Assembly (NCBI GenBank): GCA_024704765.1
Contig: JAKMXF010000221.1
Coordinates: 635,763-699,762, forward strand
Length of the DNA stretch: 64,000 bases
Source: Oopsacas minuta
Taxonomy: Eukaryota; Animalia; Porifera
Reading direction: 5' to 3'
Every line of letters begins with the position of its first letter. Position 1 is the stretch's first letter. The translations under genes and the position numbers were made by a program. Positions 21,681 to 29,470 of the stretch are shown piece by piece. A model generated the notes under the pieces. The model was given only the letters and a program-made list of their open reading frames with translations, did no database searches and was not told the DNA's origin.

Positions 21681-22655
21681 TTACTCTTCTTTGTTGTTGT
21701 TGTCTTCCTCTACAAGTATTCCTTTATACACATACACAAATATACACGATGAAATGCCTACCATCCAAAATGTACAGAATCCTAGCAACCATGCAGTCGT
21801 AAGGAATGTAGGCTTTACACTTTGTATCATTAGTTCTGGCCATCTGTTATCAATATCAGTTTTCATTAATCTCAGATGTAATGTCGTAACAGCTGTTGAG
21901 AACACATGCGCCCATTGGTGAGAACCCCCGATTATGTCGAAAGAGCCAGGCGACAATCTCTCTGGGAGCTTACTAGCGAAAACAAACACTAACAGGATTG
22001 AGAAAACAACAATAGCGAAGTGTGAATATAATTGTTTGTAAATAAACGTTTCTGATCCATCAGGGAAGAGATACAGGACATAAATAAGAGTGTTAGACCA
22101 GAGGAATGGTTGCATATACGCTAGACTCCTGATGATAAATCTGTACCTCCTCCAGTAGAACCGACTCAGACAGGTTATTGGTACCACGCTCATAGTCAAG
22201 AGGGCCCCCAGTCCTAGATACGTATACTCGAATTGGAATGTTGGTCTGTTTAGCGGTCTATAATAGTAGAAACTGGCTATAATCCCTCCCATCTCGTATA
22301 GTGCTATTCCTGAGTAGTCCATGAAAAAACAGAAATGTCTGAATTTGTAGGAAATTGCGTTGAATAAATGCGCGAAACTTGACAGGAAAGTATACAATAA
22401 ACTGCCAACCCAGTAACATACCAATGGGAGGTACCGTGTGTCTGTTATGTCTCTATATGAATCCCATAACCAATATGCCCATACCATAAATGGCACAAAA
22501 TGTGTCCAGAAATTCACCACTTCGTTGTTGTCACTTCTAAACATAGTTTTTACACATGAGACAGGACTTAGGCCTATTCGTCTGTACCCTGATAGAATAT
22601 AGGGCTCCCTCAACCAATGAGATACTGAGTTAGCTGACAGACCTCTCAGAGACAT
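21681..22655 (-). CDS. PAQR family 7TM protein (membrane progestin receptor-like)
   Basis: EPYILSGYR, NEVVNFWTH, SSFAHLF, MDYSGI, PERLSPGSFDIIGGSHQWAH motifs. Confidence 0.92.
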   Translation of the reverse strand: MSLRGLSANSVSHWLREPYILSGYRRIGLSPVSCVKTMFRSDNNEVVNFWTHFVPFMVWAYWLWDSYRDITDTRYLPLVCYWVGSLLYTFLSSFAHLFNAISYKFRHFCFFMDYSGIALYEMGGIIASFYYYRPLNRPTFQFEYTYLGLGALLTMSVVPITCLSRFYWRRYRFIIRSLAYMQPFLWSNTLIYVLYLFPDGSETFIYKQLYSHFAIVVFSILLVFVFASKLPERLSPGSFDIIGGSHQWAHVFSTAVTTLHLRLMKTDIDNRWPELMIQSVKPTFLTTAWLLGFCTFWMVGISSCIFVYVYKGILVEEDNNNKEE

Positions 22656-23340: not shown

Positions 23341-24378
23341 ATGTCCCAATCAATACTTATATTAAGCGCTAAAAATAGTAACTGTGCTGATTGTAACACC
23401 TCTAAGCCCTCATGGTACAACTTTAAGCAGGGGGTGTTTATTTGTACCAATTGTGCTGGAGTACATAGAGGACTCCCAACACAAGGTGTTAGAGTAAAAT
23501 CTGTGGATTTGGATAATTGGACAGAAGAGGAGGTCAAAGAAGTTGAGATGGCAGGAGGTAATAAAGTTGTTAATGATCGTTTGGAGAGGTTCCTCCCCCT
23601 CTACTACCCGAAACAGGGTGACATGACACCTCCAGATATAAGGAAAGAGTTCATAACACATAAGTATGTGAAGGAGACTTTTTGTACCAATGGGAATTAT
23701 CTTAAGTATACTCCTGCTTCTGGAGGAATGGAGGGTGTTTTGGAAAAGAAAGGCAAGGACAAGAGTCTCTGGAAATCGCGACACTTTGTACTGACACCTG
23801 TCAGCATTAAGTACTTCCTGGAGACAGGACAATCCGAACCAAAGTCCTGTCTCCCTGTCTCACAACTGGAAATACATCTGGAAATGTGTGATAGGACAAG
23901 GTCCTGTTTAGTACTCACTCACCTCAGTGATTCGGGGGCCTCAGGACGTAAGTACTACGTGAGGACAGCTGGAGGGGACCTTCTATTCGATTGGTACTTC
24001 GCACTACTCACTGCACAATCAGCAAAGGATTCGTTTAGTTCCAGTTCCCAAATGGATGTTTATAGAATGGGTAATCTTTACAAGGCAGGAGCACAAAGTT
24101 TTGATATGTGGAGGTTACGGTGGTTTTCTCTAAATGGCGCGCACGTCACCTATTCCTCAGAAAAACTGTCCGCTAAACCACGAGGGGACTTCATGATGGG
24201 ACCAATGAGCAAGGGATTCAAAGTAGAGTCAGGTGTTACCCACCGGATACCAGCACCCACCAGTTTCACCTTCCAGGTCCTGACGGGGGGAAGGACCTAT
24301 AAATTATGTGCTGAAACAGCTGAGGAGAGGGACAGTTGGATAGATGCATTTTCCCGCTCAATTTCCCTCCAATCATAA
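23341..24378 (+). CDS. ADAP1: ArfGAP with dual PH domains (centaurin-alpha/ADAP), copy A, catalytic residues intact
   Basis: CADC-x16-CTNC-AGVH-R zinc finger with arginine finger, VKSVDLDNW, two PH domains; ATG at 23341. Confidence 0.92.
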   Translation: MSQSILILSAKNSNCADCNTSKPSWYNFKQGVFICTNCAGVHRGLPTQGVRVKSVDLDNWTEEEVKEVEMAGGNKVVNDRLERFLPLYYPKQGDMTPPDIRKEFITHKYVKETFCTNGNYLKYTPASGGMEGVLEKKGKDKSLWKSRHFVLTPVSIKYFLETGQSEPKSCLPVSQLEIHLEMCDRTRSCLVLTHLSDSGASGRKYYVRTAGGDLLFDWYFALLTAQSAKDSFSSSSQMDVYRMGNLYKAGAQSFDMWRLRWFSLNGAHVTYSSEKLSAKPRGDFMMGPMSKGFKVESGVTHRIPAPTSFTFQVLTGGRTYKLCAETAEERDSWIDAFSRSISLQS

Positions 24379-25581
24379 TATTTGTAATTAATTAATCCAA
24401 TAAATTCCTTATTAACTTTTGGTAGTTAAGTATTGGCCATTAGAGAGATGTCCTTACGGTATGGGGCTAGAAATTGTCCTATGGGTACAGTTTGGGGTTT
24501 TTTTCTATAATTAATAAGGAATGATATATTCACACCTTTTGCTGTTTATAATATAACAAAGGAAACCCTCATATCAATATGAGGATAATCTCATAAATTC
24601 CATTCTACAAGTGTGTTGCTACGCAAACTATTCCCTGTTATAACACATATAATATTTCAAAGTTTAATCTAGAAATCAACAGAATTGAAATCTATTTTTA
24701 CATTCCAGAAGACAGATAGGTTGTCATATAGAATTTGACAATTGATCGTTATCTCCAATAATATTTTCAATAGCACAGTTGAACGCATACATCCAACTTT
24801 CTCTATCTTCATAGGTGTCAGCACATAACTTATAAGTCCTGTCAGGTGTGACCAATTGGAATGTGTATTTTGTAGGTGCTGGCATTTTGTGAGTAGCCCC
24901 CATCTCCACGGCGTACCCCTCATAATCTGGTCCCAGCATGAAGTCCCCCTGAGGTAACGCTGATAGTTTATTGGCTGAATAAGTGACGTGTGACGCGTTA
25001 ATTGAGAACCATCTTTTCCTCCAAATATCAAAACTATGTGTGCCTACTTTATACAGCTGTCCAGATTTAGAAACCTTCTTTGATTGGCTGACTAGTCCAA
25101 CAACTGCTCTTGACAACGTACCACGGTGTTTGGAATCCTTTGCTGATTGTGCAGTGAGTAGTGCGAAGTACCAATCGAATAGAAGGTCCCCTCCAGCTGT
25201 CCTCACGTAGTACTTACGTCCTGAGGCCCCCGAATCACTGAGGTGAGTGAGTACTAAACAGGACCTTGTCCTATCACACATTTCCAGATGTATTTCCAGT
25301 TGTGAGACAGGGAGACAGGACTTTGGTTCGGATTGTCCTGTCTCCAGGAAGTACTTAATGCTGACAGGTGTCAGTACAAAGTGTCGCGATTTCCAGAGAC
25401 TCTTGTCCTTGCCTTTCTTTTCCAAAACACCCTCCATTCCTCCAGAGGCAGGAGTATACTTAAGATAATTCCCATTGGTACAAAAAGTCTCCTTCACATA
25501 CTTATGTGTTATGAACTCTTTCCTTATATCTGGAGGTGTCATGTCACCCTGTTTCGGGTAGTAGAGGGGGAGGAACCTCTC
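23584..25581. repeat. 449-bp inverted repeat, arms 23584..24032 and 25133..25581
   Basis: The arms are reverse complements; one mismatch noticed (GCT vs GCC, synonymous). Confidence 0.92.
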
Positions 25582-25821
25582 GTACTTACCGTTAACCTTA
25601 ACGTTCCCCTCTCCACGGACTGCTTGCCCCTTCTTACCCTCGCTTAACACCTCTAACCTCTGAGATTTTAATGTTCCCCTCTTGCATTGTATTTCTTCAT
25701 GTATTTGTGCACAGCTCATACATACAAATATTTGATAGTTTGGGTTGTAATATTTGGGATTTTCTGAATTGCAATCTGCACAATTGGTTGTCCCTTGAGC
25801 TGCTTCTAACCATTCACACAT
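24724..25821 (-). CDS. ADAP paralog B, probable pseudo-ArfGAP with dual PH domains
   Basis: CADC-x16-CMSC-AQIH-E (Arg replaced by Glu); PH1 identical to copy A; first ATG at 25821. Confidence 0.9.
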   Translation of the reverse strand: MCEWLEAAQGTTNCADCNSENPKYYNPNYQIFVCMSCAQIHEEIQCKRGTLKSQRLEVLSEGKKGQAVRGEGNVKVNGKYERFLPLYYPKQGDMTPPDIRKEFITHKYVKETFCTNGNYLKYTPASGGMEGVLEKKGKDKSLWKSRHFVLTPVSIKYFLETGQSEPKSCLPVSQLEIHLEMCDRTRSCLVLTHLSDSGASGRKYYVRTAGGDLLFDWYFALLTAQSAKDSKHRGTLSRAVVGLVSQSKKVSKSGQLYKVGTHSFDIWRKRWFSINASHVTYSANKLSALPQGDFMLGPDYEGYAVEMGATHKMPAPTKYTFQLVTPDRTYKLCADTYEDRESWMYAFNCAIENIIGDNDQLSNSI

Positions 25822-26644
25822 TTCTAAATTTAGTAACAAATAACTGTCCTTGAGTAGTATTGTTTGTTGTTGTTTATGTTTGTTTATCTGTTAGTTATTC
25901 ACATTATACACATTTCCCGTTATATCTAACACGGATATCTCTAAATACCCGCTGATATCGCAGTTTAAATTGTAAAAAAAGGTCCCAAACCGTCGGAATA
26001 ACATTATATCTAATACAGGATAATCTGCTTAATAGAGATACCCGTTAATCTTGTCACTTCGCCAGAAACAGAACCAAACAAAAAGTGTTAAAGTACTCCG
26101 GTTAATCGGGTCATAATTGCCTCTTGTACCGATGTGACTCTATTATGAAGAGTCTATTGTAATTCCAGTCTCTGGAGTTTCGATATAATTATAATACCTA
26201 TTGAATTAGTATTATGTTACACATTATATGTATGTTACATAACACCTGTATATTCCTATATAATTATAGCATAGAGAGAGTATACCTTTTCACACCTGTA
26301 AAATATAATTTGTAAGATCTACAAATTTGAAATTTGGTATGTGTGTGGAATGTGATACATCTAGGAACATGTTCTACTATTTAAGTTAGCTGTTCCCACC
26401 CATGTACCCTCTATACCAATTTTAACACGTTCTGTGGACCCTTTTCATGTACTACAATACAAATTTTGAGATCCTGTGTACCCCAGCTATCGTCCGTGGA
26501 TCTCTTTGTACCCGAGGTTGGTATTAATTACAGTTAATAATAGTCCTATACTATATCATATTCTGCTATGATAGATGAAATAATCTCTTCTACTAAATAA
26601 TGAGATATTCTCCATTCTGGAACTGGAACTGGAATTATTAAATT

Positions 26645-28529
26645 ATGACATTTTTCTCTTCAAGAAGTACAATTTTTGTGCCGGGTAATTTAATTACAGA
26701 GCCAAAGGTGTGTGTAGATTGTAATGCGAGTAATGCTTGTTACTATAGTTACGCATATCGGGTCTACGTATGTATGGAATGTTCAAAAGTACATGATTTA
26801 TATTTGGAGAAATATAGCGAGGAAACTCCAGTCATATATCAGGACAGAGAATGTCAGTTAGTAGATATTGAAGGTTGTAAAGAAGATGACAACGGATCGT
26901 TGAATAAGGAATTGGAGTTATTTTTACCAGAATTCTATCAGAAAACGGGTGTCAATACTCCTCTGGTTAGTTCCATATTGTGACACCTTTTTGAGGTGTG
27001 AATTAATGTGTTTTATTTAGGTAATAAGAAAAGAGTTTCTAATATCAAAATACAGTCATAAGTCCTTCACTTCATCAATAGGATTGGATACATTATTGCC
27101 TGATTCTAAAATTGGAATTTTATGGAAGAAAGGAAAGTCCAAAGGGACCCCTTGGCACCCCTGCTATGTCAGAGTGGACAAGCACTCCCGAACCCTTGAG
27201 TACTTCAGTCACAAATCCAATCGGTTACTCCCCAAGGCTACGATACCTCTCGAAGATATAAATTTATTTGTTGAACCAATGTACCGATTAACTGAGCCCC
27301 TGACCAATGACGGAGAATTTTATCTTCATATTATATGGACAAAACACGCGCCAAATACATTTACCAAAATGTCACTTCTAAAAAAGAAAAATTCTGTTAT
27401 CGAAATCAGGAATTTATATTTCAGACCGTCAACAGATTTTGATTTGTTTCAATGGTATTTCTCTATTTTGGCAGGTAAACATGAAATTGTGTCGCTCACA
27501 CCCACGCGAAACAATAACACCTTGAAGCGTTGCTACACTTTTGACACCAGACCAGATATCATCGGAGAGCGGGAGCAGTTTGGTCCAATTGTTTCTAGGA
27601 AGCGTCTTACTGATATCATTTCTGATGAAAATGAATTTATACCTCAAAATAGAAAATCTGATTTGTACGATCTAGCCATAGACCCATTGGTATGTTCCCC
27701 TAATCCCCTAGTGTCTCCTCCTGATCCCAGGGAGGTAAAGACCCTCCCTGACCGCTTAAGGATGGCCATGACAGGTTCTTACTGCATGGATACAAGAGGT
27801 GACAATAGTTATGTCGAATCAGCTGTTCCCTCTAATCTGATTGCTCCAGATGAGGAAGTGGAAGGTGATTTTAAGACTAATGTAACCGATTTTGAATTAT
27901 CAGGTAAATTCTATTCCTGCCACTCAGCTGGCACAACTAATCCCTTCTTGGAACCACCTGCGCCATCTTTGGATAATATATTCCAGAGTAAGTTGGATAT
28001 TTGTCCCATTATTGATCCCCAGGGTGCAGGAATTGATAAGGACTCTTGGATTAATTGTTCTGTTAACTATGCTAATTATCCTTCAATTGATTCTTGTCCT
28101 CTTGACCTATCTGATACTGAGGTGGATCAATTCACGTTAACACCTTTATGTGACACATTACGACTAGACATACAGAGCAATAAGAAGTACTACCAGATGT
28201 CTGGCTGGTTACATAAAGTTGGCGACATGCAAGGTGACAAGTGGCGGAGTAGATGGTTCACTTTATCGAATACTCTTGTCACATATTCCGACACTAATTT
28301 ATCACCTTTCCCTAAGAACTATTTCTATCTTGGTTCCGATTTCAAAGGGTATTATGTGGATACAAATTACCCGCGGTTCCATCTAATGCCCCCTCCCACT
28401 AGATTTGTATTCAGGATTGTAACACCTTCTAGAATTTATCATATTTGTGCTCAGACAGAGGAGATTAGGAAGATATGGGTAGAAATTATTTCTAGAGTAA
28501 TTGCCTTGTCCTTTGTGTTAAAATTATAA
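26645..28529 (+). CDS. ADAP paralog C, divergent pseudo-ArfGAP with PH1, long insert and PH2, join(26645..26965,27021..28529), 609 aa
   Basis: CVDC-x16-CMEC-SKVH-D. A 55-bp phase-0 intron restores TPL|VIRKEFLISKY (cf. PPDIRKEFITHKY in A/B). C-terminal PH GWLHKVG...WRSRWFTL. Confidence 0.85.
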
Positions 28530-29005
28530 TATTTATTTATTCATTGTTTGTTTACTCTATTTACCAATTTATCACATTACAAACACATGCCATATTTGTG
28601 TCGGTAATAGATATATACATATTTTCACACCTATTACACTGGTCAACAAACAATTTGTTGCCTAAGATGTTAGATCCGTTTCTATGTATATTGATCTCGG
28701 GGAATCTGAAAATAGCATCGGCTTACCCGAATTGACTCTATTTTTTGGGATAGCCAATGTTATATTTGGCGTGATAAGTATAACAATAGTGAAGATATAC
28801 AACACATTAATAGTGTGATGGCGTTTCAGTGGTGACATATAATTATGCTTCCAAGTGTAAAATTTGTAATTTTTGAATGTAACTATTAACAGCAAAACCG
28901 ACAATATGGAAGTACAATATTAACATTAAGGCTAATCCGAAGGAAATACTTTATTATTGACAAAACCATTAATTGGTTAAAAGTAATAATAAAAGAATAA
29001 TAAAA

Positions 29006-29006
<1 letters not shown>

Positions 29007-29066
<60 letters not shown>
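29007..29066. repeat. (AAT)n microsatellite, ~20 units
   Basis: Directly visible; the source of the spurious poly-I and poly-L ORFs. Confidence 0.95.
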
Positions 29067-29067
<1 letters not shown>

Positions 29068-29470
29068 TACTCTTCCTTAAGCTTTGTTGAATGTCCAATT
29101 GGAATAGATACATATTTATTTCCATTATGCAATACAACGCACTTCAAGCTTCTCTTGGAATTATCAATGAATAGACGCCAATCTTCTGGTCTATATTGTG
29201 GTACTCCCATTTCCAGGAGAAGTCCTCCAATGCCATTGCAGAAGACGAGGCCTTCTTGTTGGCTAAAGTAATGAAGTAATTCTTCTTCTCTATGACGGTA
29301 ATATGTTATCTTAGTTCCAGGGCTAAGAATATTCTTCTCTTTGAGCCTGGATGCCAAATTTCTGAACAGTCTTTAGACAGGCTGAGGTCCCTGATTAGAT
29401 AATTGAGCTCTTCCTGATTGAATTGACCAAATAATGAAGAGCTGTCTTGGTCTCCAAGCTTTACCTCAAA
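29068..29470 (-). mobile_element. Frameshifted, truncated DNA-transposase relic
   Basis: FNQEELNYLIRDLSLSK / frameshift near 29359 / LASRLKEKN...WRLFIDNSKRSLKCVVLHNGN resembles a widespread invertebrate transposon-derived protein family (recalled; superfamily not verified). Confidence 0.7.

What the first reader, a model, noticed from the sequence alone, without database searches (positions are those of the whole stretch)
23341..28529. Three-gene ADAP cluster: one active ArfGAP and two pseudo-GAPs with the arginine finger replaced by an acidic residue
Seen: all three paralogs keep the C-x2-C-x16-C-x2-C zinc finger, but the residue at C+5 is R in copy A (CAGVHR), E in copy B (CAQIHE) and D in copy C (CSKVHD). 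The SxxLDxW segment is intact only in A. Copy C also lacks the basic K/R-x-R in PH1 (WHPCY vs WKSRH) and has a long acidic insert before PH2. All ORFs are intact. Established: the C+5 Arg is the catalytic arginine finger of ArfGAPs, and ADAP PH domains bind PIP3/PI(3,4)P2. Inference: two independent-looking charge reversals in retained genes suggest decoy or scaffold proteins that bind Arf-GTP or lipid without promoting hydrolysis, tuning the active copy.
Basis: partly seen in the sequence, partly recalled or inferred. Interest (0 to 1): 0.78.

Follow-up and report, generated by a model that had tools for sequence, protein, structure and literature searches.

The report
Glass-sponge ADAP genes lacking catalytic arginine
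A glass sponge keeps one normal-looking ADAP Arf-GAP gene beside two sister genes whose catalytic arginine is replaced by an acidic residue, and these "dead" copies have been conserved by selection across seven genomes as part of a nine-gene family in which seven members lack the arginine.

Summary
The window belongs to the glass sponge Oopsacas minuta. It carries three intact ADAP/centaurin-alpha-type genes (ArfGAP zinc finger plus two PH domains). All three keep CX2CX16CX2C. The residue at C+5 is Arg in A, Glu in B and Asp in C.

B and C are not decaying. The order PAQR-A-B-C recurs in six other related genomes. Every B there has Glu. C has Asp in six genomes and Gly in one. C keeps a phase-0 intron at the same codon in all seven. 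dN/dS is about 0.1-0.3, and uncorrected pN/pS never exceeded 0.64 in 500 bootstraps.

- A and B share a roughly 450-nt tract (end of the GAP domain plus PH1) that is 95-99.8% identical within each of six genomes, with the same borders. This is long-running gene conversion.
- The genome holds nine ADAP-type genes forming one glass-sponge clade, and seven lack the Arg (K, Q, E or D).
- Arg-less ADAP-like proteins also occur in Schistosoma, Sycon, echinoderms and amoebae.

B and C are best read as selected, non-catalytic, PH-targeted adaptors or regulators. The Arf-GTP "decoy" idea remains untested. This is a new variant of a known kind, of moderate interest. Another first-stage note (s1-309917) flagged the A/B tract on this same stretch.

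The parts
21681..22655 (-). PAQR/HlyIII-family gene. It is the conserved left neighbour and synteny anchor of the cluster.
   Evidence: Pfam HlyIII 102 bits. It sits next to A in all six related loci.
23341..24378 (+). ADAP-A, 345 aa: ArfGAP zinc finger with an intact arginine finger, plus PH1 and PH2.
   Evidence: Pfam. Eight A-type proteins from other assemblies all read HR at this site. A keeps 21-23 of 29 conserved GAP positions.
23467..23469 (+). Arg43 codon (AGA) of A, at the C+5 arginine-finger position.
23569..24032 (+). A arm of the A/B gene-conversion tract. It covers the last third of the ArfGAP domain, the linker and all of PH1.
   Evidence: Inverted repeat of 464 nt at 98%. Best-scoring segment is 449 nt with 1 mismatch. 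In the tree of this tract, sequences cluster by genome.
24724..25821 (-). ADAP-B, 365 aa: pseudo-GAP head with Glu at the finger position, plus PH1 (identical to A's) and PH2. The C-terminal ..SI is conserved.
   Evidence: Pfam. Seven orthologues all read HE. omega is 0.07-0.2. The AF2 model has pLDDT 86.8 and its best structural match is centaurin-alpha-1.
25696..25698 (-). Glu42 codon (GAA) of B, at the position of the arginine finger.
   Evidence: In the PDB search it aligns to the R of ADAP1's CSGIHR.
25133..25596 (-). B arm of the A/B gene-conversion tract.
26645..26965 (+). ADAP-C exon 1, 107 codons: a degenerate ArfGAP zinc finger with Asp51 (GAT, 26795-26797) at the finger position.
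   Evidence: Pfam ArfGap 29.4 bits. The N-terminus and zinc finger are conserved in seven genomes. omega is 0.12-0.23.
26966..27020 (+). Phase-0 intron of C (GT..AG, 55 nt).
   Evidence: The same codon position is split in all seven genomes, with intron lengths of 55-641 nt. NCBI's model LOD99_2846 uses the same junction.
27021..28529 (+). ADAP-C exon 2: end of the GAP domain, PH1 with WHPCY (27153-27167) in place of W-K-x-R-x-F, an acidic linker, and an intact PH2.
   Evidence: Pfam PH x2. Alignments.
27486..28190 (+). Acidic, poorly conserved linker of C, probably disordered. It carries an invariant TNPF motif (NPF at 27939-27947).
   Evidence: pI 4.2-5.0 in seven orthologues. TNPF is invariant in 11 sequences and was translated directly. 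AF2 pLDDT is 21-30 here, but the whole model is weak.

Best explanation
This is a real, conserved gene cluster of the glass sponge Oopsacas minuta, made of three ADAP (centaurin-alpha-type) genes.

A has the full ArfGAP catalytic signature and is presumably the working Arf GAP.

B and C are pseudo-GAPs. They keep the zinc-binding fold and a lipid-binding PH2 signature. They have lost the catalytic arginine (Glu in B, Asp in C) together with many co-conserved residues of the GAP surface. Both have nevertheless been held under purifying selection since before seven glass-sponge genomes diverged.

They belong to a glass-sponge-specific expansion of nine ADAP genes, of which seven lack the arginine.

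Inferred mechanism:
- B and C are recruited to phosphoinositide-bearing membranes by their PH domains and act there as non-catalytic adaptors or regulators.
- B carries a PH1 module kept identical to A's by recurrent gene conversion. It should therefore go to the same sites as A, where it can partner or compete with A without hydrolysing Arf-GTP.
- C has lost the key PH1 arginine and gained a long acidic linker with an invariant NPF motif, a known EH-domain ligand. This points to a scaffold role in endocytic traffic.

Shown: gene structures, residue states, conservation, selection, gene conversion, family size and fold. Inferred: loss of GAP activity, lipid binding, and the partners.
For: Identity and architecture:
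- Pfam architecture.
- Organism: NCBI LOD99_2846 of Oopsacas minuta is 100% identical to C exon 2 and lies on a contig of the same 699,762-nt length.

Conservation across genomes:
- Synteny PAQR-A-B-C in six other assemblies.
- Finger residue is R in all A, E in all 7 B, D in 6 C and G in 1 C. Both synonymous codons are used: GAA/GAG in B, GAT/GAC in C.
- The C intron is conserved.
- omega is 0.07-0.2 for B and 0.12-0.3 for the C domains. Bootstrapped pN/pS never exceeded 0.64.
- B's head is as conserved as A's: 67% vs 66% mean identity, and 26 vs 28 invariant columns of 70.

Loss of the GAP signature:
- Of 29 GAP positions conserved in 27 Arg-bearing ADAPs of other taxa, A keeps 21-23, B 12-16 and C 8-11. 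All keep the four Cys and the His.

Fold:
- B's AF2 model has pLDDT 86.8 and matches centaurin-alpha-1 structures 3FEH/3LJU/3FM8/3MDB at TM 0.72-0.77.

Gene conversion:
- Within the tract pS is 0.01-0.11, against 0.5-0.9 in the flanks. Borders agree within about 5 codons in six genomes. Trees flip from clustering by paralogue to clustering by genome.

Family:
- Nine ADAP-type ORFs in the genome, seven without Arg, forming one clade with SH-aLRT 99.
- PH2 signature residues (K, R, W) are invariant in all nine.

C's linker:
- TNPF is invariant in 11 C sequences.
- EH-domain genes are present in the genome.

Literature:
- The arginine in CX2CX16CX2CX4R is described as invariant and required for activity (PMC2542466; PMC6724607).
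Against: - No biochemical or expression data were reachable. Exact-product look-ups for A and B found nothing. The one Logan contig for a B orthologue is colinear with genomic DNA, so it says nothing about RNA.
- Loss of GAP activity is inferred from sequence alone.
That they are glass sponges is inferred from synteny and identity.
- Synonymous sites are saturated for most pairs, so omega rests on the few closest pairs.
- The AF2 model of C exon 2 is poor (pLDDT 41), so linker disorder is only suggested.
- The strict invariance of Glu in B hints at a positive role for that residue which a plain 'loss of function' account does not explain.
Confidence: 0.7

Rival explanations
1. Arf-GTP decoy. 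The B head, and perhaps the C head, still docks on Arf-GTP in the GAP-like pose but cannot trigger hydrolysis. It would thereby shield active Arf from A or act as an effector.
For: Many of B's changes at conserved GAP-surface sites are conservative: Trp to Tyr/Phe, Val to Leu, LDxW to L-D/E-x-L/M. B's head is as constrained as A's. B shares A's PH1, so the two should co-localise. [quoted passage not shown]
Against: In the canonical pose, a Glu or Asp at the finger site would face the GTP phosphates, which is electrostatically unfavourable (inference). C keeps only 8-11 of 29 conserved surface positions and has no VKS..LDxW segment. No binding data exist.
Confidence: 0.2
2. B and C are still GAPs that use another catalytic residue or a co-factor supplied from elsewhere.
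For: Other GAP families manage without an arginine finger (my own knowledge, e.g. RapGAP's asparagine). The heads are strongly conserved.
Against: The whole co-conserved signature is altered, not just the Arg: Trp, Gly at C+2, LG after the Arg, and LDxW. The replacement is acidic. Reviews state that mutation of the arginine abolishes ArfGAP activity (PMC6724607).
Confidence: 0.06
3. B and C are decaying duplicates (pseudogenes) or annotation artefacts.
For: Loss of the catalytic residue. C's Pfam match to ArfGap only just passes the cut-off.
Against: ORFs are intact in seven genomes. C has a conserved intron. omega is far below 1. The finger codon shows synonymous variation with the residue retained.
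Confidence: 0.02

Closest known systems
ADAP1/centaurin-alpha-1 and ADAP2 (vertebrate ArfGAPs with dual PH domains)
   Same: Same architecture and length. A, B and the other paralogues align end to end with ADAP1 at about 25-30% identity. B's model superposes on full-length centaurin-alpha-1 crystal structures. The PH2 basic signature is kept.
   Different: B and C lack the CX4R arginine and other GAP-surface residues. C has a roughly 235-aa acidic linker between the PH domains and a Cys in place of the key PH1 arginine. The sponge family has nine members against two in humans, and they form their own clade.
AGFG1/Hrb (ArfGAP domain protein with FG and NPF motifs that binds Eps15 EH domains; the NPF part is my own knowledge)
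   Same: An ArfGAP-type zinc-finger head is joined to a disordered region carrying NPF motifs. It is thought of mainly as an adaptor, and it is listed with clathrin/AP-2/EPS15 vesicles in PMC6724607.
   Different: AGFG1 keeps the arginine (my own knowledge) and has no PH domains. C is an ADAP derivative, not an AGFG member.
Pseudo-GAPs of other GTPase families, e.g. the arginine-less RhoGAP-like domains of ARAP2, OCRL and p85 (my own knowledge)
   Same: The GAP fold is retained and the catalytic arginine is lost. The protein is kept for binding or scaffolding.
   Different: They belong to a different fold family. I found no published description of natural arginine-less ArfGAP-domain or ADAP proteins in the searchable library.
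Arg-less ADAP-like proteins in other taxa found here
   Same: These have an ArfGAP zinc finger, mostly with the ADAP dual-PH layout (several are longer proteins), and a non-Arg residue at C+5:
- Schistosoma spp. 'centaurin alpha' (Gln; a 22-member cluster)
- Sycon ciliatum ADAP1-like (His)
- Diadema and Apostichopus (Glu)
- Acanthaster (Cys)
- Soliformovum (Lys)
- Luapelamoeba (Ala)
- Diphylleia (Ser)
.
   Different: They fall outside the glass-sponge clade, so they are separate losses. None was seen as a conserved enzyme plus pseudo-enzyme tandem with a shared converted module.

Membership tests
ADAP subfamily of ArfGAPs | N-terminal ArfGAP domain with a C4 zinc finger spaced CX2CX16CX2C | tested here: met
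   A, B and C all have the exact spacing. Pfam ArfGap scores are A 98, B 61 and C 29.4 bits against a cut-off of 28.7.
ADAP subfamily of ArfGAPs | Conserved catalytic arginine four residues after the last Cys (CX4R) | tested here: not met
   Met in A only (Arg43). B has Glu42 and C has Asp51. The same holds in all orthologues, except Gly in one C. B and C are therefore ADAP-derived but not catalytic-type members.
ADAP subfamily of ArfGAPs | Two PH domains following the GAP domain | tested here: met
   Pfam finds two PH stretches in A, B and C exon 2. B's model has two PH sandwiches and matches 3FEH/3LJU. In C the two PH domains are separated by a roughly 235-aa linker.
ADAP subfamily of ArfGAPs | Closest relatives are ADAPs (phylogenetic membership) | tested here: met
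   The best named and PDB hits are ADAP1/centaurin-alpha-1. The nine sponge paralogues form one clade among ADAP-like proteins.
ADAP subfamily of ArfGAPs | PI(3,4,5)P3/IP4 binding by the PH domains | not testable with these tools
   Sequence only. The basic signature is kept in PH1 of A and B and in PH2 of A, B and C. In C's PH1 the key Arg is Cys.
ADAP subfamily of ArfGAPs | Arf6-directed GAP activity | not testable with these tools
   No assay was possible. It is predicted present for A and absent for B and C.
Pseudoenzyme (pseudo-GAP) | Catalytic residue lost, fold retained, gene under purifying selection | tested here: met
   Residue states, fold of B, omega of 0.07-0.3. The fold of C's head was not modelled, because the exons were not joined.

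The most novel reading that the evidence does not exclude
The strictly invariant Glu of B (seven genomes, both Glu codons used) may be a gained function rather than a mere loss. In this reading an ArfGAP-fold head inserts a 'glutamic finger' into the Arf nucleotide pocket. It would act either as an anti-GAP that locks or shields Arf-GTP, or as a nucleotide-destabilising factor, by analogy with the glutamic finger of Sec7 Arf-GEFs. Gene conversion of PH1 would keep it co-targeted with its GAP sister A, giving a paired on/off module at one membrane site.
Probability: 0.06. Interest if true: 0.85.

Novelty: new variant of a known kind. Interest (0 to 1): 0.55.

Why it matters
ArfGAPs are defined by an 'invariant' arginine, and I found no published account of natural arginine-less ArfGAP-domain proteins.

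Here a whole animal lineage keeps seven such ADAP paralogues next to two canonical ones. One enzyme/pseudo-enzyme pair has its lipid-binding module held identical by gene conversion across deep divergences.

This offers a natural system for separating the GAP-dependent and GAP-independent (scaffold) roles of centaurin-alpha/ADAP proteins.

It also shows how selection can hold two heads apart (Arg versus Glu) while recombination homogenises the adjoining module.

The same loss in schistosomes, a calcareous sponge and echinoderms suggests that a non-catalytic ADAP function is general and has been overlooked.

Tried and rejected
- Pseudogene or neutral decay: rejected by intact ORFs, the conserved intron and omega well below 1.
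- The A/B identical tract as an assembly artefact, or as protein-level constraint only: rejected. It recurs in six independent assemblies with the same borders. Synonymous sites inside it are near-identical (pS 0.01-0.11), while the flanks are saturated.
- A/B sisterhood as an artefact of the converted tract: rejected. A and B still group together in a tree of the unconverted N-terminal 68 columns (support 96/97), although that tree is short and weak elsewhere.
- Fixed inversion between the inverted tracts, which would swap the PH2 tails: not seen. All seven genomes join the Glu head to the ..SI tail.
- Expression evidence: look-ups of the A and B products found no records. The Logan contig L008 for a B orthologue is colinear with genomic DNA and carries no poly(A) tail, so it is uninformative.
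- Literature on natural Arg-less ArfGAPs or ADAPs: three searches found nothing relevant, and a search for the ADAP1 R49C mutant found nothing.
- Parsimony on the family tree needs only 2 Arg/non-Arg changes inside the sponge clade. I do not read this as a regain in A, because A also carries about 10 other canonical positions that would have to be regained with it.
- The AF2 model of C exon 2 was too poor (pLDDT 41) to use beyond suggesting a disordered linker.
- The joined (spliced) C protein was not built or searched. The exons were handled separately by reference, and NCBI's own spliced model P0035 was used where a single sequence was needed.
- The third word-index protein search was not used.


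Full report
**What is in the window.** The stretch 23341-28529 holds three genes of one family.
- A is a single ORF on the plus strand (23341-24378, 345 aa).
- B is a single ORF on the minus strand (24724-25821, 365 aa).
- C is on the plus strand in two exons (26645-26965 and 27021-28529), split by a 55-nt GT..AG phase-0 intron.

Pfam finds an ArfGap domain followed by two PH domains in A and B. In C, exon 1 has a weak ArfGap match (29.4 bits against a cut-off of 28.7) and exon 2 has two PH domains. A and B are tail to tail, and B and C are head to head. A PAQR/HlyIII gene lies to the left.

All three keep CX2CX16CX2C. Five residues after the last Cys, A has Arg (CAGVHR, AGA at 23467-23469). 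B has Glu (CAQIHE, GAA at 25696-25698 on the minus strand). C has Asp (CSKVHD, GAT at 26795-26797).
- The KSVDLDNW segment is intact only in A.
- C's PH1 has WHPCY where A and B have WKSRH.
- C has a roughly 235-aa acidic linker (pI 4.4) before PH2.

**Organism.** The product of C exon 2 is 100% identical to NCBI 'hypothetical protein LOD99_2846 [Oopsacas minuta]', which lies on a contig of the same length (699,762 nt) as the window's other products. The window is therefore from this glass sponge, as earlier notes of the scan had said.
- NCBI's model uses exactly my splice junction but starts at an internal Met. It therefore lacks the first CxxC.
- The upstream start is conserved in all orthologues, so the longer model is the better one.
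Exons were analysed separately by reference, and NCBI's own spliced protein (P0035) was used where one sequence was needed.

**Conservation.** A word-index search with A found pairs of A-like and B-like proteins on shared contigs of unnamed ENA assemblies.
- Fetching six of those loci showed the same gene order, PAQR-A-B-C.
- All A orthologues read HR and all seven B read HE.
- C reads HD in six genomes and HG in the most distant one.
- Both synonymous codons occur for Glu in B and for Asp in C. That is direct evidence the residue itself is held.
- C's intron splits the same codon position in all seven genomes.

**Selection.** Synonymous sites are saturated between most genomes. Where dS can be estimated, Nei-Gojobori omega is:

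| Region | omega |
|---|---|
| A, each of three segments | 0.07-0.24 |
| B, each of three segments | 0.07-0.19 |
| C exon 1 | 0.12-0.23 |
| C PH1 | 0.12-0.24 |
| C linker | 0.18-0.47 |
| C PH2 | 0.09-0.32 |

For the two closest pairs, even uncorrected pN/pS never exceeded 0.64 in 500 codon bootstraps. B's head is as conserved as A's: 67% versus 66% mean identity, and 26 versus 28 invariant columns of 70.

**More than the arginine is gone.** I took the 29 positions that are at least 70% conserved in the N-terminal two-thirds of the GAP domain of 27 Arg-bearing ADAPs from other taxa.
- A orthologues keep 21-23 of them.
- B keeps 12-16.
- C keeps 8-11.
- All keep the four Cys and the His.

Among the lost positions are the Trp after the first CxxC (Tyr/Phe in B, mostly Tyr in C), the Gly at C+2, the LG after the Arg, and the LDxW. 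This is the pattern expected when the catalytic or Arf-facing surface is released from its old constraint while the zinc-finger fold is kept.

An AlphaFold2 model of B (56-sequence alignment, pLDDT 86.8, pTM 0.81) has a confidently folded head. Its best matches are the full-length centaurin-alpha-1 crystal structures 3FEH, 3LJU, 3FM8 and 3MDB (TM 0.72-0.77). A sequence search of the PDB aligns B's Glu with the Arg of ADAP1's CSGIHR.

Reviews describe this arginine as invariant and required for activity (PMC2542466; PMC6724607).

**Gene conversion between A and B.** A and B share an inverted tract, 23569-24032 versus 25133-25596. Over 449 nt there is one mismatch. The tract encodes the last third of the GAP domain, the linker and the whole of PH1.
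- The same tract exists in five other genomes: 432-459 nt at 95.2-98.5% identity within each genome, with borders agreeing within about five codons.
- Synonymous difference is 0.01-0.11 inside the tract, against 0.5-0.9 in the flanks.
- It is absent from the most distant genome, L007.
- Trees of the N-terminal segment split A from B with 100/100 support. In the tree of the tract, A pairs with B genome by genome.

This is concerted evolution by recurrent gene conversion confined to one module, while the Arg head and the Glu head are held apart. Recombination between the inverted arms could in principle swap the two PH2 tails. All seven assemblies show the same isomer, with the Glu head joined to the conserved ..SI tail. 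Another first-stage note (s1-309917) flagged this tract on the same stretch.

**The cluster is part of a larger family.** A six-frame Pfam scan of the 61-Mb genome found 22 ArfGap matches. Besides A, B and C, six more single-ORF genes have the ArfGAP plus two PH layout.
- One has Arg (G000:C221:496353).
- The others have Lys (four genes, on C354, C310, C24 and C317) or Gln (C144).

So seven of nine ADAP-type genes lack the arginine. All nine keep the basic K/R/W signature of PH2.

I ran a full HMM search of 1.84 billion representatives with a profile of the family. A tree of 77 ADAP-like proteins then placed all nine paralogues and their orthologues in one clade (SH-aLRT 99). This is a glass-sponge-specific expansion. 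Orthologues from other assemblies keep the non-Arg state but not always the same residue: Lys/Lys, Gln/Glu and Lys/Glu.

A and B are sisters in the full tree and also in a tree of the unconverted N-terminal part. A carries the whole canonical signature, so the A/B ancestor must have had it. B's loss is therefore most simply separate from C's. Parsimony on residue state alone would allow a regain in A, which I consider unlikely for about ten co-conserved positions.

**Arg-less ADAPs elsewhere.** Among the 150 best representatives, C+5 is Arg in 76 zinc fingers and something else in about 24. Named examples:
- Schistosoma 'centaurin alpha'/ADAP1 (Gln; a 22-member cluster across many Schistosoma species)
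- Sycon ciliatum ADAP1-like (His)
- Diadema and Apostichopus (Glu)
- Acanthaster (Cys)
- The amoebozoans Soliformovum (Lys) and Luapelamoeba (Ala)
- Diphylleia (Ser)

They lie outside the sponge clade. The phenomenon is therefore recurrent, and I found no paper describing it.

**C's special features.**
- PH1 has Cys where ADAP PH domains have the key Arg, and this holds in all seven genomes (WHPC/WRPC).
- The linker is 213-282 aa, acidic in all seven (pI 4.2-5.0) and poorly conserved (34% identity, omega about 0.3).
- The linker nevertheless contains an invariant TNPF in 11 sequences, plus near-invariant FYSC..G and D.CPI motifs.
- NPF is the classical ligand of EH domains (my own knowledge), and the genome encodes EH-domain proteins.
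- The AF2 model of exon 2 is poor (pLDDT 41). It shows no structure in the linker and a PH-like pattern for PH1.

**Interpretation.**
- Shown: three real genes, one canonical and two arginine-less; long-term purifying selection on all; a conserved fold for B; module-restricted gene conversion between A and B; a nine-gene lineage-specific family dominated by arginine-less members.
- Inferred: B and C cannot stimulate GTP hydrolysis, and they act as PH-targeted, non-catalytic adaptors or regulators. B would be co-targeted with A through the shared PH1. C would act as a scaffold using its NPF-bearing linker.
It is unlikely for C. An acidic side chain facing the phosphates argues against a canonical docking pose (inference).
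- The invariance of Glu in B suggests a positive role for that residue. A 'glutamic finger' acting on the Arf nucleotide pocket is the most novel reading that is not excluded, and I give it a low probability.

**Limits.**
- There are no expression or biochemical data. Look-ups for transcripts failed or were uninformative.
- dS is saturated for most pairs.
- The family tree is a quick search with a midpoint root.

Noticed in passing
L001:607-8987 (ENA ERZ26869290 ctg357917; also L002): The contig end carries an inverted duplication of the B and C genes (B-C then C-B, followed by A and PAQR). This is either a real palindrome or an assembly artefact.
   Followed up: no
L003, L005 and L006, A versus B, alignment codons about 290-340 (PH2): There is a second stretch of raised A/B nucleotide identity (76-96%) inside PH2 in three of the related genomes. 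It may be a further, partial conversion tract. It is not seen in the window.
   Followed up: partly
window 26645-26773, compared with NCBI model LOD99_2846 (P0035): The public gene model for C starts at an internal Met (MECSKVHD). It omits 43 conserved N-terminal residues, including the first CxxC of the zinc finger, so Pfam sees only PH domains in it. The database product for A (P0008, 216 aa) likewise starts at an internal Met and lacks the GAP domain.
   Followed up: partly
G000:C221:496353, C354:627198, C144:249666, C310:404845, C24:27685, C317:376030: Six further single-ORF ADAP-type genes lie elsewhere in the genome. At the finger position one has Arg, four have Lys and one has Gln.
   Followed up: partly
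G000:C166:192729-196784 and G000:C3:23243-24598: The Arf family gives at least 49 matches in the genome. About ten are high-scoring Arf-like genes, some in local clusters, and one copy has two in-frame TGA codons.
   Followed up: no
G000:C321:200754-201101 (L013): An ArfGAP domain with an intact Arg is followed by a C2 domain. This is the architecture another first-stage note (s1-221613) flagged as plant/protist-type.
   Followed up: no
window 28977-29357 (-) and 28995-29070: An (AAT)n microsatellite is embedded in a 126-aa ORF whose N-terminal part looks like a transposon-derived fragment (recalled resemblance, not searched). The repeat reads as a poly-Ile/poly-Leu run.
   Followed up: no
P0092 cluster (Schistosoma spp.), P0186 (Sycon ciliatum), P0150/P0163/P0116 (echinoderms): Proteins annotated as ADAP/centaurin-alpha-like in other phyla also lack the finger arginine (Gln, His, Glu, Cys). 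In Schistosoma the Gln form is shared by many species.
   Followed up: partly
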